From assembly GCA_964035545.1 (NCBI GenBank), contig OZ037765.1:31247504-31311503 (forward strand): a DNA stretch of 64,000 nucleotides, read 5' to 3'. This document shows, piece after piece, positions 13,301-61,600 of the stretch; the stretch's first letter is position 1, and each line of letters opens with the position of its first letter. Origin of the DNA: Bugula neritina. Lineage: Eukaryota > Animalia > Bryozoa. A program made the translations under genes and the position numbers. Under the pieces are notes generated by a model that saw nothing but the letters and a program-made list of their open reading frames with translations, made no database searches and was not told the DNA's origin.

Positions 13301-13671
13301 CTAGAGACTATCTTTGTAATGTCAAGGCCATATTAGTGTGACCTTCTTTTGCGTTCAACTTGTTTGTGTAAAGCAACTCCTATACAGTGATCAGTTTTTT
13401 ATTAAAGGATTTGTGTCCTCTTTTTGCCACAGCCACGACCAATAATAGCGCTAGATACTTGTAAACAACTTTAAAATGGTTTCGCTTTCAGTTTCATAGA
13501 TGGCACACTGCGACTATTTCTTTCAAGAACCTTATTCATAAAGTTGTTCTAAGAATTAGCTTCAAAGTTTTGCAGTGGTATTGATTTATTATATTAAACA
13601 TTGTTTAAAAATACGTTAAACTTAGTTTGCCAAATATGTTTCTCAATGAATAAACTATTAGTATTAGTATT

Positions 13672-13862
13672 TGTTATAGTGGCACGCTGAGAGTTTAGCT
13701 AATGACAATAGCCTATCAGATACGTGAGCTATAGTGTTACTAAGAGTTGCCCTACCAGCCACCGTATAGCTGAGATAGCTACAAGCTAAGGCAGATAAAA
13801 CCCAGACAAACAGAGTGAACGGTCTCCTTCATCTAGCAGCTTTATCACTGATTGCTATAACA
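13672..13862 (+). repeat. 5' LTR
   Basis: TG...CA with an 8-bp terminal inverted repeat. Identical to the 3' LTR except TACGTG vs TACATG. Confidence 0.97.
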
Positions 13863-13876
13863 TGGCGCAGTCAGCA
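13863..13876 (+). other. Primer binding site, tRNA-Ser-like
   Basis: TGGCGCAGTCAGCA directly after the LTR. Resembles the complement of a tRNA-Ser 3' end (...GACUGCGCCA). Confidence 0.7.
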
Positions 13877-13996
13877 TTTTAACGAACCTGCCAGTGAGAA
13901 ACTCTTTCTGTCCTTACAACTATAGATGATAGATAAGTACTTTCTTCAATTAATCATTATCAGTTGCAAGTGTTTTGAATATAATATAATAATATA

Positions 13997-14157
13997 AGTG
14001 TAGTGTAGTGTAGTGTAGTGTAGTGTAGTGTAGTGTAGTGTAGTGTAGTGTAGTGTAGTGTAGTGTAGTGTAGTGTAGTGTGGTGCAGTGCTACTGTTGG
14101 TGCAGTGTTATTGTTAGTGCAGTGTTATTGTTAGTGTTGTGTTATTGTTAGTGTAGT
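13997..14157. repeat. (TAGTG)n microsatellite in the retroelement leader
   Basis: About 16 perfect TAGTG units to 14080, then degenerate units. Confidence 0.95.
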
Positions 14158-14365
14158 CTAATGAGTGATAATCGTAATTTGATATCGTGATTCACAGCTG
14201 GCAACTGTGATACTACAGTCATTTACAACAAGTGACCGAAACAGTGATACTCAGTGTTTAAGATATTTTGTGATTGGCATCTTGACATAACACACGAGTA
14301 AATCAAGGCTCCAAGCTAGTACAAGTAGTAACCTTTGTAGCACAGGGAATCGTAACAACAAAGTC

Positions 14366-15502
14366 ATGGATTTAAATTCATTTCCAAGACTTCAATTGAA
14401 TTGTAATGATGTGACAGGATCATGGAATGATTGGCTAGCTCAATTTGAGATAACAGTAGAGTTAACTACTTTGAATCTGGGAAAAGAGACAGTGGAGGGT
14501 GTAGAAGTAAATAAATTTAGAGGTAGGACTAAGTTGTTAGCATTGTTGAGCGCAATAGGCAATGATGGTAGAGCCACGTTACAATCTCTTGGCTTTGATT
14601 TAAGAAACAATGGGAATGAAGGCTATGAGCAAGCATTAGGTCTACTTAGGGGCCACTATGATAGGTCAGATAGCTTTTATGTTAAAACAATGAGGTTTGT
14701 GACAGTGTCACAGGCCATTGATGAGGATGAAAGAGAATACTTGCTGAGAGTAGAAAAACTTAGTAGAGAATTAGGTTTAGGTGCTGGGACCGAGGATGTT
14801 AGAAGGAGACTTAGTGTTGCCTTAGCAGTAAATGGCTTGCGCGATACTAATGCTAGGAGACAATTATTGCAAGAACCCGATTTATCCTGGGACGACTTAA
14901 ATACCAAGCTTAAAGCAAAAAAGCTAGCTAGAGACTCAGACCTACTTTTAAATGAAGCTAGGACAATAGTGGAAGTCAAACAAGAAGTCGGGGCTGTAAG
15001 TTCTCTTAAGCAGACTAGAAACAGTAGCAATGACACCTGTGACAGTTATTCTGTTAATAGGGTTTCTAGATCTAGAATAAAGTGGAGACCTTATTTGAGA
15101 AGTAGCCTTAGGAATAGTGACCACTATAGAAGTAGAAGCTCGAGTGGATCTAGTAATAGCTCTGATGATCATAGTAAACGACATTACAATAGTAGGGATA
15201 AATTCTGTTCAAGCCAACGAAGGAGGAGGGATGAAAAACCTCTCGTAGATAGACTGAATTCGGGTTACTATCATTCTAGGTCTAAAAGGTTTAGCTCCCC
15301 TAGAAGAGAAGGAAATCTTTGCTATCATTGTAAAAAACATGATCATAGAATTAGGGACTGCCCTGATGTAAGGTGCTTCGTATGTAACTGCCGAGGGCAC
15401 ACCACTAAAGATTGCCCCGAAAGAGAGACCAAACCTTATAGGTCAAGTAGTGGGAGTAGTGATAGGAATAAGGGTTATAGGAGAGTCAGATTTGCAAGCT
15501 GA
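14366..15502 (+). CDS. gag: Gag (capsid-like N-terminus, Ser/Arg-rich linker, two CCHC knuckles)
   Basis: 378-aa ORF. WNDWLAQFE...LLSAIG...YEQALGLLRGHY pattern typical of Mag-type Gypsy Gag. Knuckles CYHCKKHDHRIRDC and CFVCNCRGHTTKDC. Confidence 0.9.
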   Translation: MDLNSFPRLQLNCNDVTGSWNDWLAQFEITVELTTLNLGKETVEGVEVNKFRGRTKLLALLSAIGNDGRATLQSLGFDLRNNGNEGYEQALGLLRGHYDRSDSFYVKTMRFVTVSQAIDEDEREYLLRVEKLSRELGLGAGTEDVRRRLSVALAVNGLRDTNARRQLLQEPDLSWDDLNTKLKAKKLARDSDLLLNEARTIVEVKQEVGAVSSLKQTRNSSNDTCDSYSVNRVSRSRIKWRPYLRSSLRNSDHYRSRSSSGSSNSSDDHSKRHYNSRDKFCSSQRRRRDEKPLVDRLNSGYYHSRSKRFSSPRREGNLCYHCKKHDHRIRDCPDVRCFVCNCRGHTTKDCPERETKPYRSSSGSSDRNKGYRRVRFAS

Positions 15503-15622
15503 CTATATGATGGCAATGACAGCAAGTTATTTCCTCCTGAACAAGGAGAAATTACGGATACTAGACGGGGGAGACTAAGCAAACCTCCTAATAGACTAAA
15601 CATGCAGAGGTATAAATATTAA
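15503..15622 (+). pseudogene. In-frame post-stop extension carrying a Pol/integrase C-terminus-like motif
   Basis: After TGA, in frame: LYDGNDSKLFPPEQGEITDTRRGRLSKPPNRLNMQRYKY*. TRRGRLSKPPNRL resembles the TRSGRxxxPPxRL tail of Gypsy/Mag Pol. Confidence 0.6.
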
Positions 15623-15691
15623 TGTGTTTTTATAGATATCGTTTTAGAAAACTTGAGAAAAACAATATATAGATAGAGAAAGAGACAAACA

Positions 15692-16732
15692 ATGAGCAAT
15701 AGTGAGAAAGAGAAGGAAGGTATAGGGGAACCCGACATGGACTCTTGGTCTAAAGCCGGACCCTCAGGAAGACATAAAGAAACGGTAAAAGTAGCTAACC
15801 CCCAGGGTAAGCCCAAGAATACAGAAGATAAGGCTAAGCTTAAGAAGCCACATGAGGTATGTGGCAACAAGGGCACAATTAGGTGTGCCATCTGTAGATG
15901 CTTCAGGGATCACTCTGCCCGAGACTGTCCCAATAATAAGTGTTACAGGTGTGGGCAGAAAGGTCATTGGGTGGAGGACTGCAGAGAAGTCTATTGCAGT
16001 TGGTGTTGTGTCGCAGCCGAACACAAAACCTCAGACTGTAGTCACGCACCTTCTAGCTTCAAGCGGAAGGCTGTTAATGGTGTTGACTTTCAAGATCTAG
16101 CACCAAAATTAGCCAAGGTTTCAGGTAGTCAGAAATCAAACTATGCAAGTGTTGCCTCTGGTGGTGTAGCTACATCATCAAGCTATGTTCATGCATTAAA
16201 GCCTAAAAATGTTATTGTCAGTGAAGTTTCAGGGTTCCTGAATGGCTTGACTGGGTGCGACTTCCTGGATGGGGAGGCTTATGCACTAAGGAAAGAGGAA
16301 TTAAATAGAAAAAAGCAAAAACTTCAACGAAAGTTCAACAGGCAAATGGAAGAGATCAGTGAGCAAGAGAGTCTCTTGGAAAAGGAGTATCAGTGCTCAA
16401 TGGCTATTAAAGTAGCAATCGAAAACTGGGCCAACGTGGCCAACGTGCATTCCAGAGGGTTGGGTAGCACGATACTAAACCCTGCAACCACAGTTGCGGA
16501 AGGTCCCAGTGGTAACCAGGAGGAGTCAAAGGCCGTAGAGGAGTCGCCGACCCCAGGTCGCCCTCGGGACGACACTTGGGAGGAGTCAATGGCCGTAGAG
16601 CCCCAGACCCCCGGTGTACATGGTGGTTCAGACCTTGGTCTGAGACCGACCTACAGTCCTAGTCAGCCTCAGGCAACTGAGACTGGGGAGGTGAAGATGG
16701 AAACATCTTCTAATCCCGAAGCACTGCATTGA
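15692..16732 (+). CDS. Retroelement ORF2: three zinc knuckles, coiled coil and acidic disordered tail
   Basis: 346-aa intact ORF. CAICRCFRDHSARDC, CYRCGQKGHWVEDC, CSWCCVAAEHKTSDC; NYASVA motif; heptad-like LRKEELNRKKQKLQRKFNRQMEEISEQESLLEKE; repeats EESKAVE/EESMAVE. Confidence 0.85.
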   Translation: MSNSEKEKEGIGEPDMDSWSKAGPSGRHKETVKVANPQGKPKNTEDKAKLKKPHEVCGNKGTIRCAICRCFRDHSARDCPNNKCYRCGQKGHWVEDCREVYCSWCCVAAEHKTSDCSHAPSSFKRKAVNGVDFQDLAPKLAKVSGSQKSNYASVASGGVATSSSYVHALKPKNVIVSEVSGFLNGLTGCDFLDGEAYALRKEELNRKKQKLQRKFNRQMEEISEQESLLEKEYQCSMAIKVAIENWANVANVHSRGLGSTILNPATTVAEGPSGNQEESKAVEESPTPGRPRDDTWEESMAVEPQTPGVHGGSDLGLRPTYSPSQPQATETGEVKMETSSNPEALH

Positions 16733-17069
16733 GGTTCTGGTCAGTCTCAGGCAACTGAGACTGAGGGAGAAGAGGGTGGGAACATCCTCCGATTCCAACT
16801 CACTTACTTACACACTTACCGACACACTAAACAACCTACTCACCTAACTTACTCACCTACTTATTTACTCACACACTCAACGACACACTGACTCGCGAAC
16901 TACTAAATTACAAATAGTTAAAGCTTGTGTTTACAGTTTCTGGCATATAGAGGTGAGTAAGTTTACCCACAGACATGTGGTACTCATCAGCTTATAGCTT
17001 TTAGAAATAGTATGTAATTGAAATGCTTAGTTTTAGCAGGTGGTCACCAGCCTTTATTGGAAGGGGGCA

Positions 17070-17260
17070 TGTTATAGTGGCACGCTGAGAGTTTAGCTAA
17101 TGACAATAGCCTATCAGATACATGAGCTATAGTGTTACTAAGAGTTGCCCTACCAGCCACCGTATAGCTGAGATAGCTACAAGCTAAGGCAGATAAAACC
17201 CAGACAAACAGAGTGAACGGTCTCCTTCATCTAGCAGCTTTATCACTGATTGCTATAACA
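17070..17260 (+). repeat. 3' LTR
   Basis: Direct repeat of 13672-13862, preceded by the polypurine tract. Confidence 0.97.
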
Positions 17261-17789
17261 GTATTGCTATTTGCATATAATTTTATCGCCATCACTTAAT
17301 TTCAGACGTACTCTGAGACTCACAGTCAATCACATTGGCAGTCTTACTCTTTACCTTGATCTTAGCGATATTCAAATGAGTGTCAAAGTACCATTAAGAA
17401 TTACATCTATTTAAGCAAATTTAAATATCTATTTGTAAATGCAACTCTTCTTTTTTTTTTGTCATCCTTGTTAATGTAAAGCTGCAAATAACTAAGAAGC
17501 GTCAGTCACTCTCTCAGTCAAAGTGAAACTGAAGCTCAAATGCAAACTCAGTGTTTTAAGACTACTCACAAAAATAAGTTTTTCAATTTTAAGCAATATT
17601 ATGGTCGGTAAGATTAGGTATTTTGCTAAATTAAGATTTGCAGCAAGTCAATTAATATTGTGTTTATTCAAGTCACTGTTTTGACTAGTGAAGTACCTAA
17701 GCCAGTAAGTTCTTTAGTCGTTATTAGTTGAATTTGACAACTTGAAAAAAATATTTGTTTGTTACTTAACTTTTACTTTGTAGAATTAA

Positions 17790-20700
17790 ATGGCTCGCAG
17801 AAATATTGAAGCAGCCATTCAGGCAAGCCAAGAATTGGAGTTAGAAGGTGAGTGCAGAAGACCACTAATTTATAATGTTTTTCAGTTATTATTTATTATC
17901 ACAGACATATTTTAATTTACGGCATGTATTGGTAATGATTTAGTGAAGTGATCTTTTGAGAAAGAAATCTATTTTTGTTTCAGGAAAATTGTTGCCGTGT
18001 AAAATACCAAACTCCTACAGCAAGTTGGAGTCTTATAAAGTAATCAGTAGCCAGCAAGAATTAGATGGAGTGTATAGTTTGCAATATTCCCCTGATGGTT
18101 CAATGTTAGCAGTTGGGACAGGAAATGAAGCTATGAGGGTTAGTTGTAGTTTCCCAACAAAATACAGTACAGCTAGTACAACAAAGTACTTTTTTCTTCA
18201 AAAAGGGGGGGGGGAGCTCAACAAATCTGTTTGATGATTACTACAGCATGTTACCTGTTTCATAAAAATTGAGAAAACTGAAAAATTACTATAACATAAA
18301 TGTAGATATTATAATGCAAAAAACAAAAATATCTTTGAAAGATATTGTTTTAGCTTGTATAAAGCCTTTTTGGAACATTCTTGCATTTTTATATCATAGA
18401 ATTAGTTTTTTTTGATACAGAAATTTTTATGTATAATCCAAAAAACCTCAAAATTTTTAGTTATAATTAAGTTATAAGTAAGTGTTATTTTCAATGTTAT
18501 GTTTGAGTTCTTTCTAATGCTGATTTATGTTGAAAGTTGTATGACACGGCATCTGGAAAACATATCGAAGACCTGCGTCAGCCAAGATATGGCGGATTTC
18601 CTGTCAAGAGTCTTAGGTGGCATCCTTATGATCACCATATTCTGTACGGTGCAACTTGCAACGGGATGATCTATGCACTGAATGTAAAGTCACACACCTG
18701 CACAGCTGTTGTCAGCGGTATGTTGCATCTAGCTGTCTGCTGCCATCTTATTTAAAATCTTATTATTGTGAAATTAATTTACTTTTATTGATATTTTAAC
18801 CTGTGTAGTTTTATAGTATAATGAAAGAAATTTCACGACTTGTAGACTGGTATTATTGCTTAGTGCTAGGCCTGCTGTACATGCATGTAAGCTGATGTAT
18901 AAGTTGCTAGGCAACGCTAAATGCAACCATTAAAATCAAATACCAAGAAATATTCAAAGTAAATGTAGAAGAGGTAATGTCTTTAACTAATTATAATAAC
19001 CAGTCAGTGAAAAATAAATCTTTGCTTTTCTAATAACTATTCATTCATGTTTCAGAAATTTTTTTTTATAAAGTAAAGCATAAGTTGCATTTCAGAAGGA
19101 GCGCTAACCTGTGTTCTTTTCAAAACTAACAGTTTGAATTATGGGCTATTATGCAGATCTGCAATTTATAATATATTTCTGCTGACAGTCAAACTCTCTC
19201 TGCAATGATTGTTCACTATTGTTCAATGTTTGTATATTGGATTTCATTATATGCAAAAGTATATGCATGTCTGTCTTTTAAGAACGAAAAAATGAAATAA
19301 ATTGCCTCGACTTCAGTGCAGACGGTTCAACATTCGCTACAGCTGGTAAAGACCTGGCTGTTAGAATATACGACACAAAAACTTGTAAGGTATATTCTAC
19401 ATAAACTGTGTCAGTATTCTTGAATACTACCTTGTAATATCGATATAATACACTTGCAAGTAATGCTTTTATTGAAGTATGTTTCATAGAAACAATGCTA
19501 TTCATTAGATATTAATTTAGCTGAAGCTTACAGTATTAAAATAACCTGTTTTCCTCAGTTTTATTAGAGATTTTATTTGGGTTGTCAAGCAGCGTTAGCT
19601 GAAATTTTATCCCTCAAAAGAGGAATAACCAGTCACACTACTGTATATATTGAGATGTGTCTACTGGGTTTAATTTAATGTGCAGAGTATTACATTAGTT
19701 GGAATATTTGTAACAAATCAATAATCTTAAAAAAGTGTACAAAACAAGTTGTATAAAGTTAGAATTCAAGCTGTAAATCATTCAGAAAGACATTTACTTT
19801 GCCTCTTTAAAGTTATTTAAAGGCTTAAATCGGAGAAGATTTTTAATGGTTTAGTTTTTAATAATGGATGTTTTAAAATAACAAAATAAATCAATACTTT
19901 GAATATAACAGCAGCTTTTATACAGTCTTTCTGCAGTTGCTTCTTAGAACAGCATTCATAATGGGTCTCTTTTATTCACCATCTTTTCAGCATTTCAACT
20001 GATGTTTTTTAAATGTCATTTCCTGTTTAATATTTTCTATCCTAAAGCTTTTGTGATTCACTGAATCTAACGTGCATTAAACTATTTGTATCAGGAAAAT
20101 AGACTTTATACTATAGGTGGGCTAAAGTACGTTGCAGAATCTATTTAGAAAGCACTTGTCAAAGTTGTGAAATATTAAGCTATTTAATAATCTAAGAAAT
20201 GCTATCAGTGGGAGACATGAAAATGCGCACACTATTTAATACCTAACTATATAGATATAGATTTCAAACATGAGTATATGAAAATATGATTAGATGTGAA
20301 GTTTTGTCATGTTGGAAATTAATAGAAAGTTTTTGCATTTTATAATCATCTGGGATAACAAAAAATATAGTAAACAAAGAAGTTTTCAACTGAACAAAAT
20401 ATAATGTTATAAATGAATTTTTTATATCAAGTCAATGTATAATGATGCACTTTAGTGATTTTCCTCTTATTTTGTTTTTGGTGTGTAGGAAATAAAATGC
20501 TATGAAGGTTATAGCAGTTCGACACCTGCAGAAGACACTGAAGTTCAAGGTCATGGAATGAGAGTGTTTGCACTGAAGCATTCACCTGATAACAGTCACA
20601 TCTTACTCTCAGGGGGCTGGGATAATCACATTAAGGTAAGTCTTGTATTACATCCTTATATAGCTGTACTTACACTAGTATAATATCTTATACACTTACA

Positions 20701-24792: not shown

Positions 24793-30792
<6,000 letters not shown>

Positions 30793-58600: not shown

Positions 58601-61600
58601 ATGGTGTTCATAGCTCTTAAAAAACTATAAATTACCCTAATTGTTTCAACCTTCTGTGAACACAACATCATACTGACCACAAAGGCATGTAGCCTAAGGT
58701 CACATGATGAAAAGTCACTTACTTTGGCTGTCACACTTTGCAATACCCAATCTGTTGCAATGATAGATCATCAGCAGGTGCTTAAATTCACCAAACTGTG
58801 TGTGAGAACAGCTTTTGTCATATTTGTAGCTATTCCCAGCCTCAGTGGTTCGCATCACAGTCGTGGTATCTGCATATGTTAATAAATAATATTACTTTAA
58901 TGTAATAGTTTCTATAATATTTAAATAAACCATTATATTAAATCTTATTGATATTATTCTTTGGTATTATAAATGCTTATGTGTAATGTGTGATGTGTAA
59001 TGTGTGATGTGTGATGTGTAATGTGTGATGTGTAATGTGTGATGTGTGATGTGTGATGTGTGGTGTGTGGTGTGTGATGTGTGATGTGTGGTGTGTGGTG
59101 TGTGGTGTGTGGTGTGTGATGTGTGATGTGTGATGTGTGATGTGTGATGTGTGATGTGTGGTGTGTGGTGTGTGGTGTGTGGTGTGTGGTGTGTGGTGTG
59201 TGGTGTGTGGTGTGTGGTGTGTGGTGTGTGATGTGTGATGTGTGATGTGTGATGTGTGATGTGTGATGTGTGATGTGTGATGTGTGATGTGTGATGTGTG
59301 ATGTGTGATGTGTGATGTGTGATGTGTGATGTGTAAAGGCTGATGCTGAATGCAACTATTAAAAATTTCTTTTGTTTACTTATTTTCCAGTAAAGAAAAA
59401 ATATAGAAAAGTAGTTTAAAATATGGCAAAATGATTTTACTGTATTAAAATCATTTAGATGAGCATATCAAATGCTAAGCTAAGAGCATAATAATCCATA
59501 AATTTTAGCTGGAGGGTTGTATTTACCTCTCATGGATTCAGTTGGTTGAGTGTGGACAGATAATGACAAATCTTTCTTCTTAGACTGGCTAGACTTCTGT
59601 AAGTCTATACACAATAATATTATGACAATATATATGTAGATTTATTGTGTGTCTGCATGTGAAAGATAAAATTAGAATAAATTATTATATTTTAACTATG
59701 GTACAATACAACAGGAAAAATTGAAATAGTAGGTGAAATGGTTCAATAACTACAATTCTAATAATATTACATCTATTTATTTAGATATAATGAAGTCACA
59801 GCTGTAACAAAAAACAAGAGTATAATATGTGTGCGCTAGTAGCATATTCAAGCATAACACCCAAGCTACAGTTCAGTAACAGAATAAATACTAAATAAGA
59901 TTATGGAATAACATACTAGTCAAGTCCATGGAGTAAAAGGTGAGGGTACTAGTCATAATGCATTGAAGTGGATATCTCATGCTTCGTATCTTAGCAAATT
60001 AATTAAATATACCGTATTTACTATAATGGAAATTCTTTGTATTATAAAAAAACTAAATTACTAGCTCATATAATATATCGAATGTATACATAAAACTTTT
60101 GCACCATGTCATTATAATATACAAATATTTTCACATAATACTTCTGTCATAATAAGTAAAATTCTAACCAATTGTTATAGAAATTCAGCTGTCCTAAGGA
60201 AATTAGTTTGTTAGTGTGACCCAATTGCATACAAAGTGAATAAATTAGAGTAAAGGTGCCATCTTACCATTGCCAGAGCAAGCAGAGCCATCTAAATCTA
60301 CTGATATATGTTTCTGCGTGACACAAGCTCTCCTGTGTAACTCACAGTGGCTATCATACATGTTCCCATCTGATCCACACACCAGTCTATGTCCGGGTGG
60401 ACAGGACCCCGCCCCGCGACACACACACAACTCTTCGCCATTGCGGTCAACCAGACAGGTCCTCCCTGCCCCACAGTAGTCCGAATTGCTGCATTCTTTC
60501 ACAGCTAGGTAAAATAAAATCAGTACATTTATAATTTGCAGTCTTCACTTGCAATGGAGTTCGGAAGTATCTAGTCACTCTGCTTTTCTAGATTCGAAAA
60601 AATATAATCTCATTATAAGACTATAGGAGGCAATGAAGCTGTTTAACCCACTTAGGCTGTTACATTTTACTATACCATTAAAAAAGCTTTCAACATTAAA
60701 CATCTATACAATACTTTAATAAAATGGTGATCTATTTTGAAAAGCTCTAAACGAGTTATTTTACATTAAGCTTTAAATGCTTTGTGTGATTTTCTTTTCC
60801 ACACCAAGTATTCCTATGAGAGCAATGGCCACAGTGATACCTGTACTCTAAAGTAGGTTAATAATAACAAGTAGTGGGAAAAGAGGCCTTAGATTCTTGT
60901 GGTGTCAGAGCTCACAGTGAGACAGCTATCATATACAACTACAGACACAGATGAGAGTATTTATGTTTACTGGTGTAACACCAGATAGCTTGATCTGAAC
61001 CACAGGACTAGATGATGGGAAATGGAAATCAATATAGTAAGATAGGTTACTGCACAAACTTAGTATACCAATATAAGGCAGATGACATTGCTTCTCTCTA
61101 GCACATACTCTATTGATTTCCCTAGTAAATATCTAGTTGCAACAAGCTTTCGTTGGCCACTTTGTATCTTTTTTCTATTCATGCTAACCGAAATAAAAAT
61201 GTTACCAATTTCTCAAACTGGTGAGGGCGGGTTTTCTCCATTTCCTGTTTTATTTTTCAAACCAGAGTGATATTATATATACCTTTAACCCTGTGCTCCA
61301 AACAAGCCTATCAAAAAAGTGTTAGTTTTTTTTTCTATTTACCCTATTCTATTTATTTATTAGGATTAGCTCCTTGACAGCTATATAATTATTGTGCTAA
61401 CACAACTTAATGAACTAACAACTTAAAGTAGTCTGCAACATGAAAAACCAATTGATTGGTCTGCACCATGGATTGAAATATTAACTGATTGACAGGCATG
61501 TGCACAATATTAATTAATTAGTTAGTTCATTACATATTCATTAGAAAATTTGCAAAATCTTCAAGGAGCTGTACTAAAATCTAAATGAATTGTAAGTTAA

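What the first reader, a model, noticed from the sequence alone, without database searches (positions are those of the whole stretch)
13672..17260. Very young pol-less LTR retroelement keeping an intact Gag plus a second zinc-knuckle protein
Seen: perfect TG..CA LTRs differing at 1 of 191 positions, intact TSD, PBS and PPT, two uninterrupted ORFs (378 and 346 aa), and no protease, RT, RNase H or integrase domain. Known: gag-only non-autonomous elements (TR-GAG) are described mainly from plants; the Gag, 5-bp TSD and short LTRs here fit the Mag group of Gypsy. Inference: this deleted form was probably itself mobilised recently, so it may be a satellite retroelement that supplies its own capsid and an accessory RNA-binding protein while borrowing Pol from a helper. 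I do not recognise this architecture from animals.
Basis: partly seen in the sequence, partly recalled or inferred. Interest (0 to 1): 0.88.

Follow-up and report, generated by a model that had tools for sequence, protein, structure and literature searches.

The report
Pol-deleted Gypsy retrotransposon copy in a bryozoan
This is a recently inserted copy of a bryozoan (Bugula) Gypsy-type retrotransposon that has lost its whole polymerase gene through one clean in-frame deletion; no other copy with that deletion turned up in a small sample, so it looks like an ordinary defective copy rather than a new kind of satellite element.

Summary
There are 191-nt TG..CA LTRs differing at one position, a 5-bp GTATT target-site duplication, a PPT, and two intact ORFs (378 and 346 aa), with no PR, RT, RNase H or IN. 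Only the PBS falls short: its first 8 nt are shared with relatives and its tRNA is unidentified.

Related copies from Bugula neritina show what it is: an internal-deletion derivative of a Ty3/Gypsy family organised as gag-UGA-pol (same frame) plus a third ORF. About 3.1-3.3 kb of pol is missing. The breakpoints lie in a 6-nt repeat, GACAGC, found at pol codons 5-6 and again 32-33 codons before the pol stop. This leaves a 39-codon in-frame pol stub.

The "second zinc-knuckle protein" is the family's normal post-pol ORF. It is intact in a full-length copy and under purifying selection (dN/dS 0.18-0.29).

None of 4 independent copies covering the gag-pol boundary, and none of 5 covering the pol-ORF2 boundary, has this junction. 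The host genome itself could not be searched, so replication in the pol-less form is untested.

An animal precedent for the gag-no pol-3' ORF layout exists (chicken EAV-HP). Interest is modest. The most novel item is the lineage-restricted third ORF.

The parts
13667..13671 (+). Left target-site duplication, GTATT
   Evidence: Identical to 17261-17265.
13672..13862 (+). 5' LTR, 191 nt, TG..CA, with 8-nt terminal inverted repeat TGTTATAG/CTATAACA
   Evidence: 190/191 identical to the 3' LTR, differing at 13724 (G). Its U5 end is about 22 nt shorter than in all sampled relatives.
13863..13876 (+). Primer-binding-site-like sequence, TGGCGCAGTCAGCA
   Evidence: TGGCGCAG directly abuts the LTR in the window, L002 and L006. 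Downstream bases differ among copies. The tRNA was not identified.
13997..14157 (+). Tandem repeats in the 5' UTR: (AGTGT)n, about 30 copies, and 17/34-nt units
14366..15502 (+). gag ORF, 378 aa. Two-domain capsid at aa 1-201. Disordered basic linker. Two CX2CX4HX4C knuckles at aa 319-350 (nt 15320-15417). UGA stop at 15500-15502.
   Evidence: 41 homologues at E<=1e-3 in the word-indexed search. (358 homologues at E<=1e-3, mostly stand-alone Gag-sized proteins). (capsid fold). (dN/dS 0.18-0.37 against other copies).
15503..15622 (+). Pol remnant in the gag reading frame. Seven pol-start codons (LYDGNDS), one junction codon (AAG), the last 31 pol codons (LFPPEQGEITDTRRGRLSKPPNRLNMQRYKY), then the TAA stop at 15620-15622.
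   Evidence: In L001, L002 and L005 the same frame runs from the gag TGA into the protease (..FTIDTGAEVS..). In L007 the same tail is the uninterrupted C-terminus of the integrase ORF.
15518..15524 (+). Deletion junction. A 6-nt microhomology GACAGC (15518-15523) plus A at 15524; the left flank ends at 15524 and the right flank starts at 15525.
   Evidence: Pol start in relatives reads ..GGCAACGACAGCAGGAGC.. Pol end in L006 and L007 reads ..ATTGACAGCGAGTTATT.. The window reads ..GGCAATGACAGCAAGTTATT.. The missing stretch is 3312 bp by L001, 3059 bp by L006 and 1038 bp by the already-deleted L002.
15692..16732 (+). ORF2, the family's post-pol ORF, 346 aa. Three zinc knuckles at aa 65-116 (nt 15884-16039): C65-X2-C-X5-H-X4-C79, C84-X2-C-X4-H-X4-C97 and C102-X2-C-X5-H-X4-C116. 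One long predicted helix at aa 194-257 (nt 16271-16462). Disordered termini.
   Evidence: (homologues found only in Bugula).. (only the helix is confident). (dN/dS 0.18-0.29 overall; 0.02-0.13 across the knuckles). (intact in the same position after pol in L006).
16733..17058 (+). 3' untranslated region with short degenerate direct repeats
   Evidence: families D3 and D6. Collinear with the 3' UTR of L002, L006 and L007.
17059..17069 (+). Polypurine tract, GGAAGGGGGCA
   Evidence: Conserved in L006 and L007, with small variations in L002 and L009, always directly before the 3' LTR.
17070..17260 (+). 3' LTR, 191 nt
   Evidence: Differs from the 5' LTR only at 17122 (A).
17261..17265 (+). Right target-site duplication, GTATT

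Best explanation
The element is a non-autonomous, internally deleted copy of a Bugula Ty3/Gypsy family.

The complete family layout is LTR - PBS - gag - UGA - pol (PR-RT-RH-IN, in the gag frame, so presumably made by stop-codon readthrough) - third ORF (three CCHC knuckles plus a long helix) - PPT - LTR.

One deletion of about 3.1-3.3 kb removed pol. The breakpoints lie between two copies of GACAGC that sit in the same codon phase, one at pol codons 5-6 and one 32-33 codons before the pol stop. The remnant therefore stays in frame.

Most likely (inferred) the deletion arose by reverse-transcriptase template switching at that microhomology. This would have happened in the replication cycle that produced this insertion, or in a recent unsampled parent. 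Integration then used RT and IN from a pol-bearing genome or particle and left the 5-bp duplication. On this reading the copy is a one-off defective product, not a proven self-propagating pol-less lineage.

Its intact gag and ORF2 reflect youth and descent from an active lineage. They do not show selection for a satellite lifestyle.

Confidence is split. The anatomy and the origin by deletion are about 0.95 certain. The value given below is for the one-off reading, meaning a deletion at or after this integration and not shared by a replicating subfamily.
For: Shown:
- Collinearity. Both halves of the element align with copies that carry pol between them: L001 (3.3 kb), L006 (3.06 kb, with RVT_1, RT_RNaseH, Integrase_H2C2 and rve hits), L007, and L002/L003 (protease retained).
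- The 6-nt microhomology at the junction, and the in-frame remnant.
- ORF2 sits after pol, intact at 346 aa, in the full-length L006.
- The junction was not seen elsewhere. All 4 independent copies covering the gag-pol boundary (L001, L002/3, L005, L006) run into the protease. All 5 covering the pol-ORF2 boundary (L001, L002/3, L004/8, L006, L007/L009) run from the integrase C-terminus.
- No Gag more than 89% identical to this copy's, and no ORF2 more than 91% identical among cluster representatives, exists in the 5.8-billion-protein database. The locus copies reach about 94%. The exact proteins are not on record. A recent burst of near-identical copies in the sequenced Bugula samples is therefore unlikely.
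- Other internal deletions occur in the family: a 2.3-kb deletion in L002, and 717 bp in L009 at the same locus as L007.
- The only complete full-length copy, L006, has LTRs 96.7% identical and a broken pol, against 99.5% LTR identity here.
Against: - The host genome could not be searched. Only about 8 independent copies were reachable, from other individuals or assemblies.
- The window copy is at least 5% diverged from every sampled copy. It has lineage-specific features that must have been in its parent RNA: a U5 end about 22 nt shorter and a different PBS tail. Unsampled members of its sublineage therefore exist, and they could share the deletion.
- Substitutions private to this copy are biased toward synonymous changes: 12 synonymous and 17 non-synonymous in gag plus ORF2, P=0.011 against neutrality. 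Its recent ancestry was therefore under protein-level selection.
- In-frame preservation of the gag-UGA context, and both ORFs being intact, also fit a form that replicates.
Confidence: 0.62

Rival explanations
1. A replicating satellite subfamily. The pol-less gag+ORF2 form is itself a multi-copy non-autonomous lineage, mobilised in trans by Pol from full-length relatives while supplying its own capsid and zinc-knuckle protein. This would resemble chicken EAV-HP, mouse IAP I-delta-1 (own knowledge) or plant TR-GAG.
For: - The insertion is very young and both ORFs are intact.
- The deletion is in frame and keeps the gag stop context, the pol terminus and the ORF2 leader.
- The lineage-specific U5 and PBS, and at least 5% distance from all sampled pol-bearing copies, imply unsampled relatives.
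- Changes private to this copy are biased toward synonymous.
- Gag and ORF2 are under purifying selection across the family.
Against: - No second copy with the junction among the 4 and 5 copies covering its two sides.
- No near-identical Gag or ORF2 in the NCBI, JGI or Logan-derived proteins.
- No intact helper pol of the family was found.
- Intact ORFs and purifying selection are equally expected for any fresh copy of an active autonomous lineage. An in-frame outcome follows automatically, because the two GACAGC repeats share a codon phase.
Confidence: 0.28
2. A post-insertion genomic deletion. A full-length copy inserted here, and pol was then lost from the chromosome by replication slippage or microhomology-mediated end joining between the two GACAGC repeats.
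For: - Microhomology deletions also arise in chromosomal DNA.
- L009 and L007 are the same locus with and without a 717-bp internal deletion.
- The 95% interval on LTR divergence is wide, 0.01-2.9%, which leaves time for such an event.
Against: - Apart from the one deletion, the copy shows no decay: no stop or frameshift in 2.2 kb of ORFs, and one LTR difference.
- L009 may be a short-read assembly chimera, since its upstream part is only 88% identical to L007.
- This rival is counted inside the 'one-off' confidence of the best explanation. About 0.2 of that 0.62 belongs here.
Confidence: 0.2
3. An assembly artefact. The junction was created by mis-assembly or collapse of a full-length copy.
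For: Nothing positive. It cannot be excluded without reads. Short-read contigs of this family do show suspect structures, such as the 5' end of L002 and L009.
Against: The junction is a clean single breakpoint at a 6-nt repeat, too short to mislead an assembler. Both flanks are otherwise perfectly collinear, and the LTRs and TSD are intact.
Confidence: 0.03

Closest known systems
Internally deleted, non-autonomous members of autonomous Ty3/Gypsy families (reported for example in mosquito LTR-element surveys, PMC3286476)
   Same: It has the same LTRs, PBS and PPT as a pol-bearing family. Internal coding sequence has been lost. It depends on RT and IN supplied by others.
   Different: The deletion here is unusually tidy. 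It removes exactly pol, stays in frame, and keeps two intact ORFs in a very young copy.
Chicken EAV-HP endogenous retrovirus (gag and env domains, no pol; 10-15 copies per genome; recent polymorphic insertions with identical LTRs; thought to need a helper) - PMC3747184
   Same: The gag - no pol - 3' ORF layout, in an animal. Young insertions. Presumed trans-complementation.
   Different: EAV-HP is a vertebrate alpharetrovirus-like provirus whose 3' gene is an envelope gene, and its pol-less form is demonstrably multi-copy. Here the 3' ORF is a CCHC and coiled-coil protein with no envelope features, and only one copy of the deleted form is known.
Plant TR-GAG elements (terminal-repeat retrotransposons with a GAG domain; the literature found is all on plants)
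   Same: Short LTR element under 4 kb, retaining gag and lacking pol.
   Different: As I recall the definition, TR-GAG elements carry gag as their only ORF and form multi-copy families. This element has a second ORF and a pol stub, is an obvious one-step derivative of an identifiable pol-bearing family, and multi-copy status is not shown.
Mouse IAP I-delta-1 and the ETn/MusD pair (own knowledge, not checked here)
   Same: Deleted LTR elements that are mobilised in trans by full-length relatives and can out-replicate them.
   Different: Those deleted forms are documented at many loci and have been shown experimentally to move. Nothing of the kind is shown here.
Ty3/Gypsy elements with an extra ORF after pol (errantivirus env, and other third ORFs; own knowledge)
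   Same: An additional ORF between pol and the 3' LTR, conserved within the family.
   Different: ORF2 has no signal peptide or transmembrane-type features in the model. It has three retroviral-type zinc knuckles plus a long helix. Homologues were found only in Bugula.

Membership tests
LTR retrotransposon (structural definition) | Two direct long terminal repeats beginning TG and ending CA, flanked by a short target-site duplication | tested here: met
   LTRs 190/191 identical, with GTATT on both sides. The relative L006 has a 5-bp TSD, CCTGG.
LTR retrotransposon (structural definition) | A PBS complementary to a tRNA 3' end directly after the 5' LTR, and a PPT directly before the 3' LTR | tested here: inconclusive
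   The PPT is present and conserved. TGGCGCAG abuts the LTR in three copies, but the following bases differ. No host tRNA gene was available to test complementarity.
Ty3/Gypsy (Metaviridae) | Pol domain order PR-RT-RNase H-IN in the family's complete members | tested here: met
   L006 has an RVT_1 start, then RVT_1, RT_RNaseH/RT_RNaseH_2, Integrase_H2C2 and rve in that order. The protease with DTG lies directly after gag in L002, L001 and L005. The window copy itself has none of these.
Ty3/Gypsy (Metaviridae) | Gag with a retroviral-type two-domain capsid and CCHC nucleocapsid | tested here: met
   The AlphaFold model has pLDDT above 90 for most of residues 1-200. The top Foldseek PDB hits are MOAP1/PNMA2, Copia, HIV and dArc capsids, with probability up to 1.00 but E-values only 4e-3 to 0.2. 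There are two CX2CX4HX4C knuckles.
Mag clade of Ty3/Gypsy | Placement of the RT/IN within the Mag clade in a phylogeny with reference elements | not tested
   No reference Mag sequences were available in the tools. The nearest named pol is only 'K02A2.6-like' at 46% identity.
TR-GAG (plant-type gag-only non-autonomous LTR elements) | Gag retained; PR, RT, RH and IN absent | tested here: met
TR-GAG (plant-type gag-only non-autonomous LTR elements) | Gag is the only ORF (as I recall the definition) | tested here: not met
   A second intact 346-aa ORF under purifying selection, plus a 39-codon pol stub.
Trans-mobilised non-autonomous subfamily (EAV-HP / IAP I-delta-1 type) | Several copies with the same internal deletion junction at different genomic sites | tested here: inconclusive
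   None of 4 copies covering the left side and none of 5 covering the right side has the junction. The host genome could not be searched. Both metagenome scans were uninformative, because known positives from the Bugula samples were not returned.
Trans-mobilised non-autonomous subfamily (EAV-HP / IAP I-delta-1 type) | A co-resident helper with matching LTR/PBS and an intact pol | tested here: not met
   The nearest pol-bearing copies have LTRs 88-92% identical and a broken pol. No pol protein above 64% identity is in the database. The sampling is incomplete.

The most novel reading that the evidence does not exclude
The pol-less form is a genuine replicating satellite retroelement of an invertebrate. 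It would carry its own capsid gene plus a lineage-specific triple-zinc-knuckle, coiled-coil protein that helps its RNA compete for the helper's Pol and particles. That would be an animal counterpart of plant TR-GAG elements with an added accessory gene.
Probability: 0.2. Interest if true: 0.6.

Novelty: new member of a known kind. Interest (0 to 1): 0.3.

Why it matters
As it stands, this is a well-resolved example of how an LTR retrotransposon loses pol. The deletion runs between two in-phase 6-nt repeats, and the resulting copy is still fresh. That makes it useful for annotating bryozoan genomes, but it is not surprising.

Two by-products are of more interest to specialists:
- The parent family places pol in the gag frame behind a UGA stop.
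- The family carries a conserved third ORF (three CCHC knuckles plus a long helix) with no homologues found outside Bugula. Its role in the retroelement life cycle is unknown.

If more copies with the same junction were found, this would be a tractable invertebrate case of a capsid-encoding parasite of a retrotransposon.

Tried and rejected
- Exact look-up of the window's Gag and ORF2 proteins in public assemblies found nothing on record.
- The search for related loci with ORF2, and a 24-mer shared by four family copies, found nothing in metagenome contigs. These negatives are uninformative. L002 and L003 contain the peptide patterns and the 24-mer and come from JGI samples, yet were not returned, so those samples are evidently not in that collection.
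- The same two queries in viral contigs found nothing.
- A search for an intact helper pol using L006's 780-aa RT-RH-IN ORF gave a best hit of 64% identity, with no family member.
- Identifying the priming tRNA failed: there are no tRNA genes in the window or in eight loci.
- Rfam found no match on the element.
- NCBIfam found no match for either protein.
- The ORF2 structure model was mostly low confidence (mean pLDDT 44), so no fold search was run on it. A PDB sequence search gave only zinc-knuckle matches.
- An empty-site test in the NCBI B. neritina assembly was not feasible. The flanking host genes have only small exons.
- The idea that ORF2 is an innovation of the deleted form was considered and rejected on L006.
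- An envelope-like role for ORF2 was considered and rejected. It has no Pfam or PDB envelope match, and the model shows knuckles, one long helix and otherwise low-confidence, probably disordered regions.
- No contig was taken to be human.
Full report
**1. Observation**

The feature is real and lies at the stated coordinates.
- Two 191-nt direct repeats (13672-13862 and 17070-17260) differ at one position, G13724 versus A17122, a CpG-to-CpA change.
- They begin TG and end CA, and carry an 8-nt terminal inverted repeat.
- They are flanked by GTATT on both sides (13667-71 and 17261-65).
- TGGCGCAGTCAGCA follows the 5' LTR directly, and GGAAGGGGGCA precedes the 3' LTR directly.
- The 28-nt LTR start occurs twice in the window, against 0 expected.
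- ORF1 (14366-15502, 378 aa) and ORF2 (15692-16732, 346 aa) are open.
- Pfam sees only CCHC knuckles in each.
- PR, RT, RH and IN proteins from related copies find nothing anywhere in the 64-kb window.
- Rfam finds nothing on the element.

**2. Host**

ORF2's only database relatives are Bugula neritina proteins and proteins from JGI samples that evidently contain Bugula DNA. The window is an AT-rich, intron-bearing animal locus with Miro-like, WD40, RPS15a and caprin-like exons. It is therefore a bryozoan sequence, from B. neritina or a close relative. It is not human.

**3. What the element is**

Loci encoding the closest Gag and ORF2 proteins were fetched and aligned to the element. In every case the element aligns as two blocks that break at element position about 1850, which is window 15517-15525. 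The relatives have extra sequence between the blocks:
- L001: 3312 bp, with RVT_1, RT_RNaseH and rve fragments.
- L006 (NCBI VXIV02002243.1): 3059 bp.
- L007 (NCBI VXIV02001205.1): pol plus a nested 6-kb insertion.
- L002, which is the same locus as L003: 1038 bp. This copy has its own 2.3-kb pol deletion and keeps the protease.

L006 is a complete 6.6-kb copy.
- Its LTRs are 213 nt and 96.7% identical, with TSD CCTGG.
- Its gag is 401 aa and open.
- Pfam hits RVT_1, RT_RNaseH/RT_RNaseH_2, Integrase_H2C2 and rve in that order.
- An open 346-aa ORF2 follows pol.
- Its pol is broken in several places.

The family is therefore Ty3/Gypsy by domain order. ORF2 is its regular third ORF, not something peculiar to the deleted copy.

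**4. Gag-pol arrangement and the deletion**

In L001, L002 and L005 the gag UGA is followed, in the same frame, by LYDGNDS.SIK.MLKVNDKEIEF(T/N)(I/V)DTGAEVS, which is the protease. More distant relatives have Gag and protease fused in one ORF (P0008, P0009 and P0020 carry PF13650/PF13975). Pol is thus presumably made by reading through the stop. That is an inference, and the UGA-CUA context fits it from my own knowledge.

In L007 the integrase ORF runs without interruption to ..IDSELFPPEQGEITHTRRGRLSKPSNRLNMHRYK*.

The window reads gag-UGA-LYDGNDS-K-LFPPEQGEITDTRRGRLSKPPNRLNMQRYKY*. That is seven pol-start codons, one junction codon and the last 31 pol codons, ending at the TAA at 15620-15622.

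At the DNA level:
- The pol start in relatives is ..GGCAACGACAGCAGGAGC..
- The pol end in the closest relatives (L006, L007) is ..ATTGACAGCGAGTTATT..
- The window is ..GGCAATGACAGCAAGTTATT..

The deletion therefore joins two GACAGC hexamers that are both in the codon phase Asp-Ser, which is why the remnant stays in frame. This is the signature of template switching by reverse transcriptase, or of microhomology-mediated deletion in DNA.

**5. The two proteins**

Gag:
- An alignment of 42 homologues gave a confident model, with pLDDT above 90 for most of residues 1-200.
- Its best PDB matches are all retroelement capsids: the MOAP1 CA-like domain (TM 0.76 normalised to the target), PNMA2, Copia, HIV-1 and dArc1. 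Probability reaches 1.00, but E-values are modest at 4e-3 to 0.2.
- A disordered basic linker and two canonical knuckles follow.
- An exhaustive search found 358 relatives at E<=1e-3, mostly stand-alone proteins of about 200-450 aa.

ORF2:
- It has three knuckles (aa 65-79, 84-97 and 102-116; the middle one is canonical).
- It has one confidently predicted long helix (aa 194-257). The rest is low confidence and probably disordered.
- The knuckle region resembles the element's own nucleocapsid (48% over 25 aa) and HIV NC or Air2 knuckles in the PDB. Nothing else matches.

Selection:
- Pairwise dN/dS between the window and other copies is 0.18-0.37 for gag and 0.18-0.29 for ORF2.
- Across the knuckles it is 0.02-0.13.
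- Both are therefore real, selected genes of the family. Since ORF2 is also present and open in a pol-bearing copy, this says nothing specific about the pol-less form.

**6. Has the pol-less form replicated?**

This is the crux, and it could only be tested weakly.

Against replication in this form:
- Four independent copies cover the gag-pol boundary (L001, L002/3, L005, L006).
- Five cover the pol-ORF2 boundary: L001, L002/3, L004/8, L006, and L007 with L009. L007 and L009 share a 3' flank and are one locus.
- None has the window's junction.
- The protein database holds no Gag more than 89% identical to the window's. It holds no ORF2 more than 91% identical among cluster representatives, or about 94% in the locus copies.
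- The exact proteins are not on record.
- No pol of the family survives as an open protein in the database; the best match is 64% identical.

For replication, or at least for unsampled kin:
- The window copy differs by 5% or more from every sampled copy.
- Its U5 end is about 22 nt shorter, and its PBS tail differs from all relatives. Both LTRs share the short U5, so that change was already in the parental RNA.
- Substitutions private to the window copy are 12 synonymous against 17 non-synonymous in gag plus ORF2. This is more synonymous than neutral expectation, P=0.011.
- About 1.3% of coding sites carry a private change. That is more than the roughly 0.26% per LTR implied by 1/191, although the interval is wide at 0.01-2.9%.
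- Its immediate ancestry was therefore an active, selected lineage that was not sampled.

Whether that lineage already lacked pol cannot be told from the data reached. The genome itself could not be searched. The metagenome scans were demonstrably uninformative, because known positive contigs were not returned.

**7. Mechanism and probabilities**

Certain, at about 0.95: this is a non-autonomous, one-step deletion derivative of a gag-UGA-pol-ORF3 Gypsy family.

| Reading | Probability |
|---|---|
| One-off event in total | about 0.62 |
| - of which born deleted by template switching in the cycle that made this insertion | about 0.4 |
| - of which deleted in the chromosome after insertion | about 0.2 |
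| Member of a replicating pol-less subfamily | about 0.28 |
| Assembly artefact | about 0.03 |

For the post-insertion reading, L009 against L007 may be a precedent, but L009 may also be an assembly chimera.

**8. Comparison with what is known**

- Internal-deletion derivatives inside otherwise autonomous LTR families are commonplace, for example in mosquitoes (PMC3286476).
- The gag - no pol - 3' gene layout exists in animals. Chicken EAV-HP has gag and env domains but no pol, is present at 10-15 copies, has recent insertions with identical LTRs, and is thought to need a helper (PMC3747184).
- Mouse IAP I-delta-1 and ETn/MusD are further precedents, from my own knowledge.
- The TR-GAG literature retrieved is entirely on plants. 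This element fails the 'gag only' criterion as I recall it, and multi-copy status is unproven.
- The Mag-clade suggestion was not tested.

**9. Verdict**

In kind, it is a new member of a known class: a young pol-deleted Gypsy copy. The features worth a specialist's note are the in-phase microhomology deletion, the in-frame UGA between gag and pol, and the Bugula-restricted third ORF.

One bench step was referred.

Noticed in passing
L004 10001-11976 and L008 6681-9305 (NCBI GCA_010799875.2): The B. neritina gene models named 'nape-2' (KAF6026879.1 and KAF6016785.1) begin with about 250 aa of this retroelement family's ORF2, at 78% identity and skipping two stops, joined to a Lactamase_B_2 part. 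This is probably an annotation chimera of a transposon ORF with a neighbouring host gene. The two contigs are 99.9% identical over 8.7 kb.
   Followed up: partly
L007 9176-10924 and L009 240-1231: The same insertion locus (identical 3' flank GTATGCTACATC.., 97% identity overall) appears in the NCBI assembly and in a JGI sample. The JGI contig lacks 717 bp of the ORF2 5' part, and its upstream part is only 88% identical. This is either a real deletion allele or a short-read chimera.
   Followed up: partly
L007 375-6447: A full-length family copy carries a nested insertion of about 6 kb inside its protease region. Its content was not examined.
   Followed up: no
window 13843-13862 and 17241-17260; L006 4851-4885: The window copy's U5 end (..CACTGATTGCTATAACA) is about 22 nt shorter than in all sampled relatives (..CACTGGTAAGACATACTATTACATTGTGGTAATCCAACA). 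This creates an 8-nt terminal inverted repeat where relatives have 4 nt. The PBS tail also differs among the window, L002 and L006.
   Followed up: partly
window 25203-25991: A (CA)n microsatellite of about 700 bp.
   Followed up: no
window 17956-18234 and about 26000-26226: Two similar WD40-type exons (..YSLQYSPDGS(M/I)LAVGTG..) about 8 kb apart on the plus strand suggest a tandemly duplicated host gene. The retroelement sits about 690 bp upstream of the first one, in the same orientation.
   Followed up: no
window 58954-59355: A degenerate short tandem repeat that reads as (HHTSHIT)n in one frame.
   Followed up: no
window 15624-15691: Pyrimidine-rich stretches ending in AG (tgtttttatag and cgttttag) lie just upstream of the ORF2 start codon. 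They could be splice acceptors for a subgenomic ORF2 message. The sequence here differs from the other copies, and nothing was tested.
   Followed up: no
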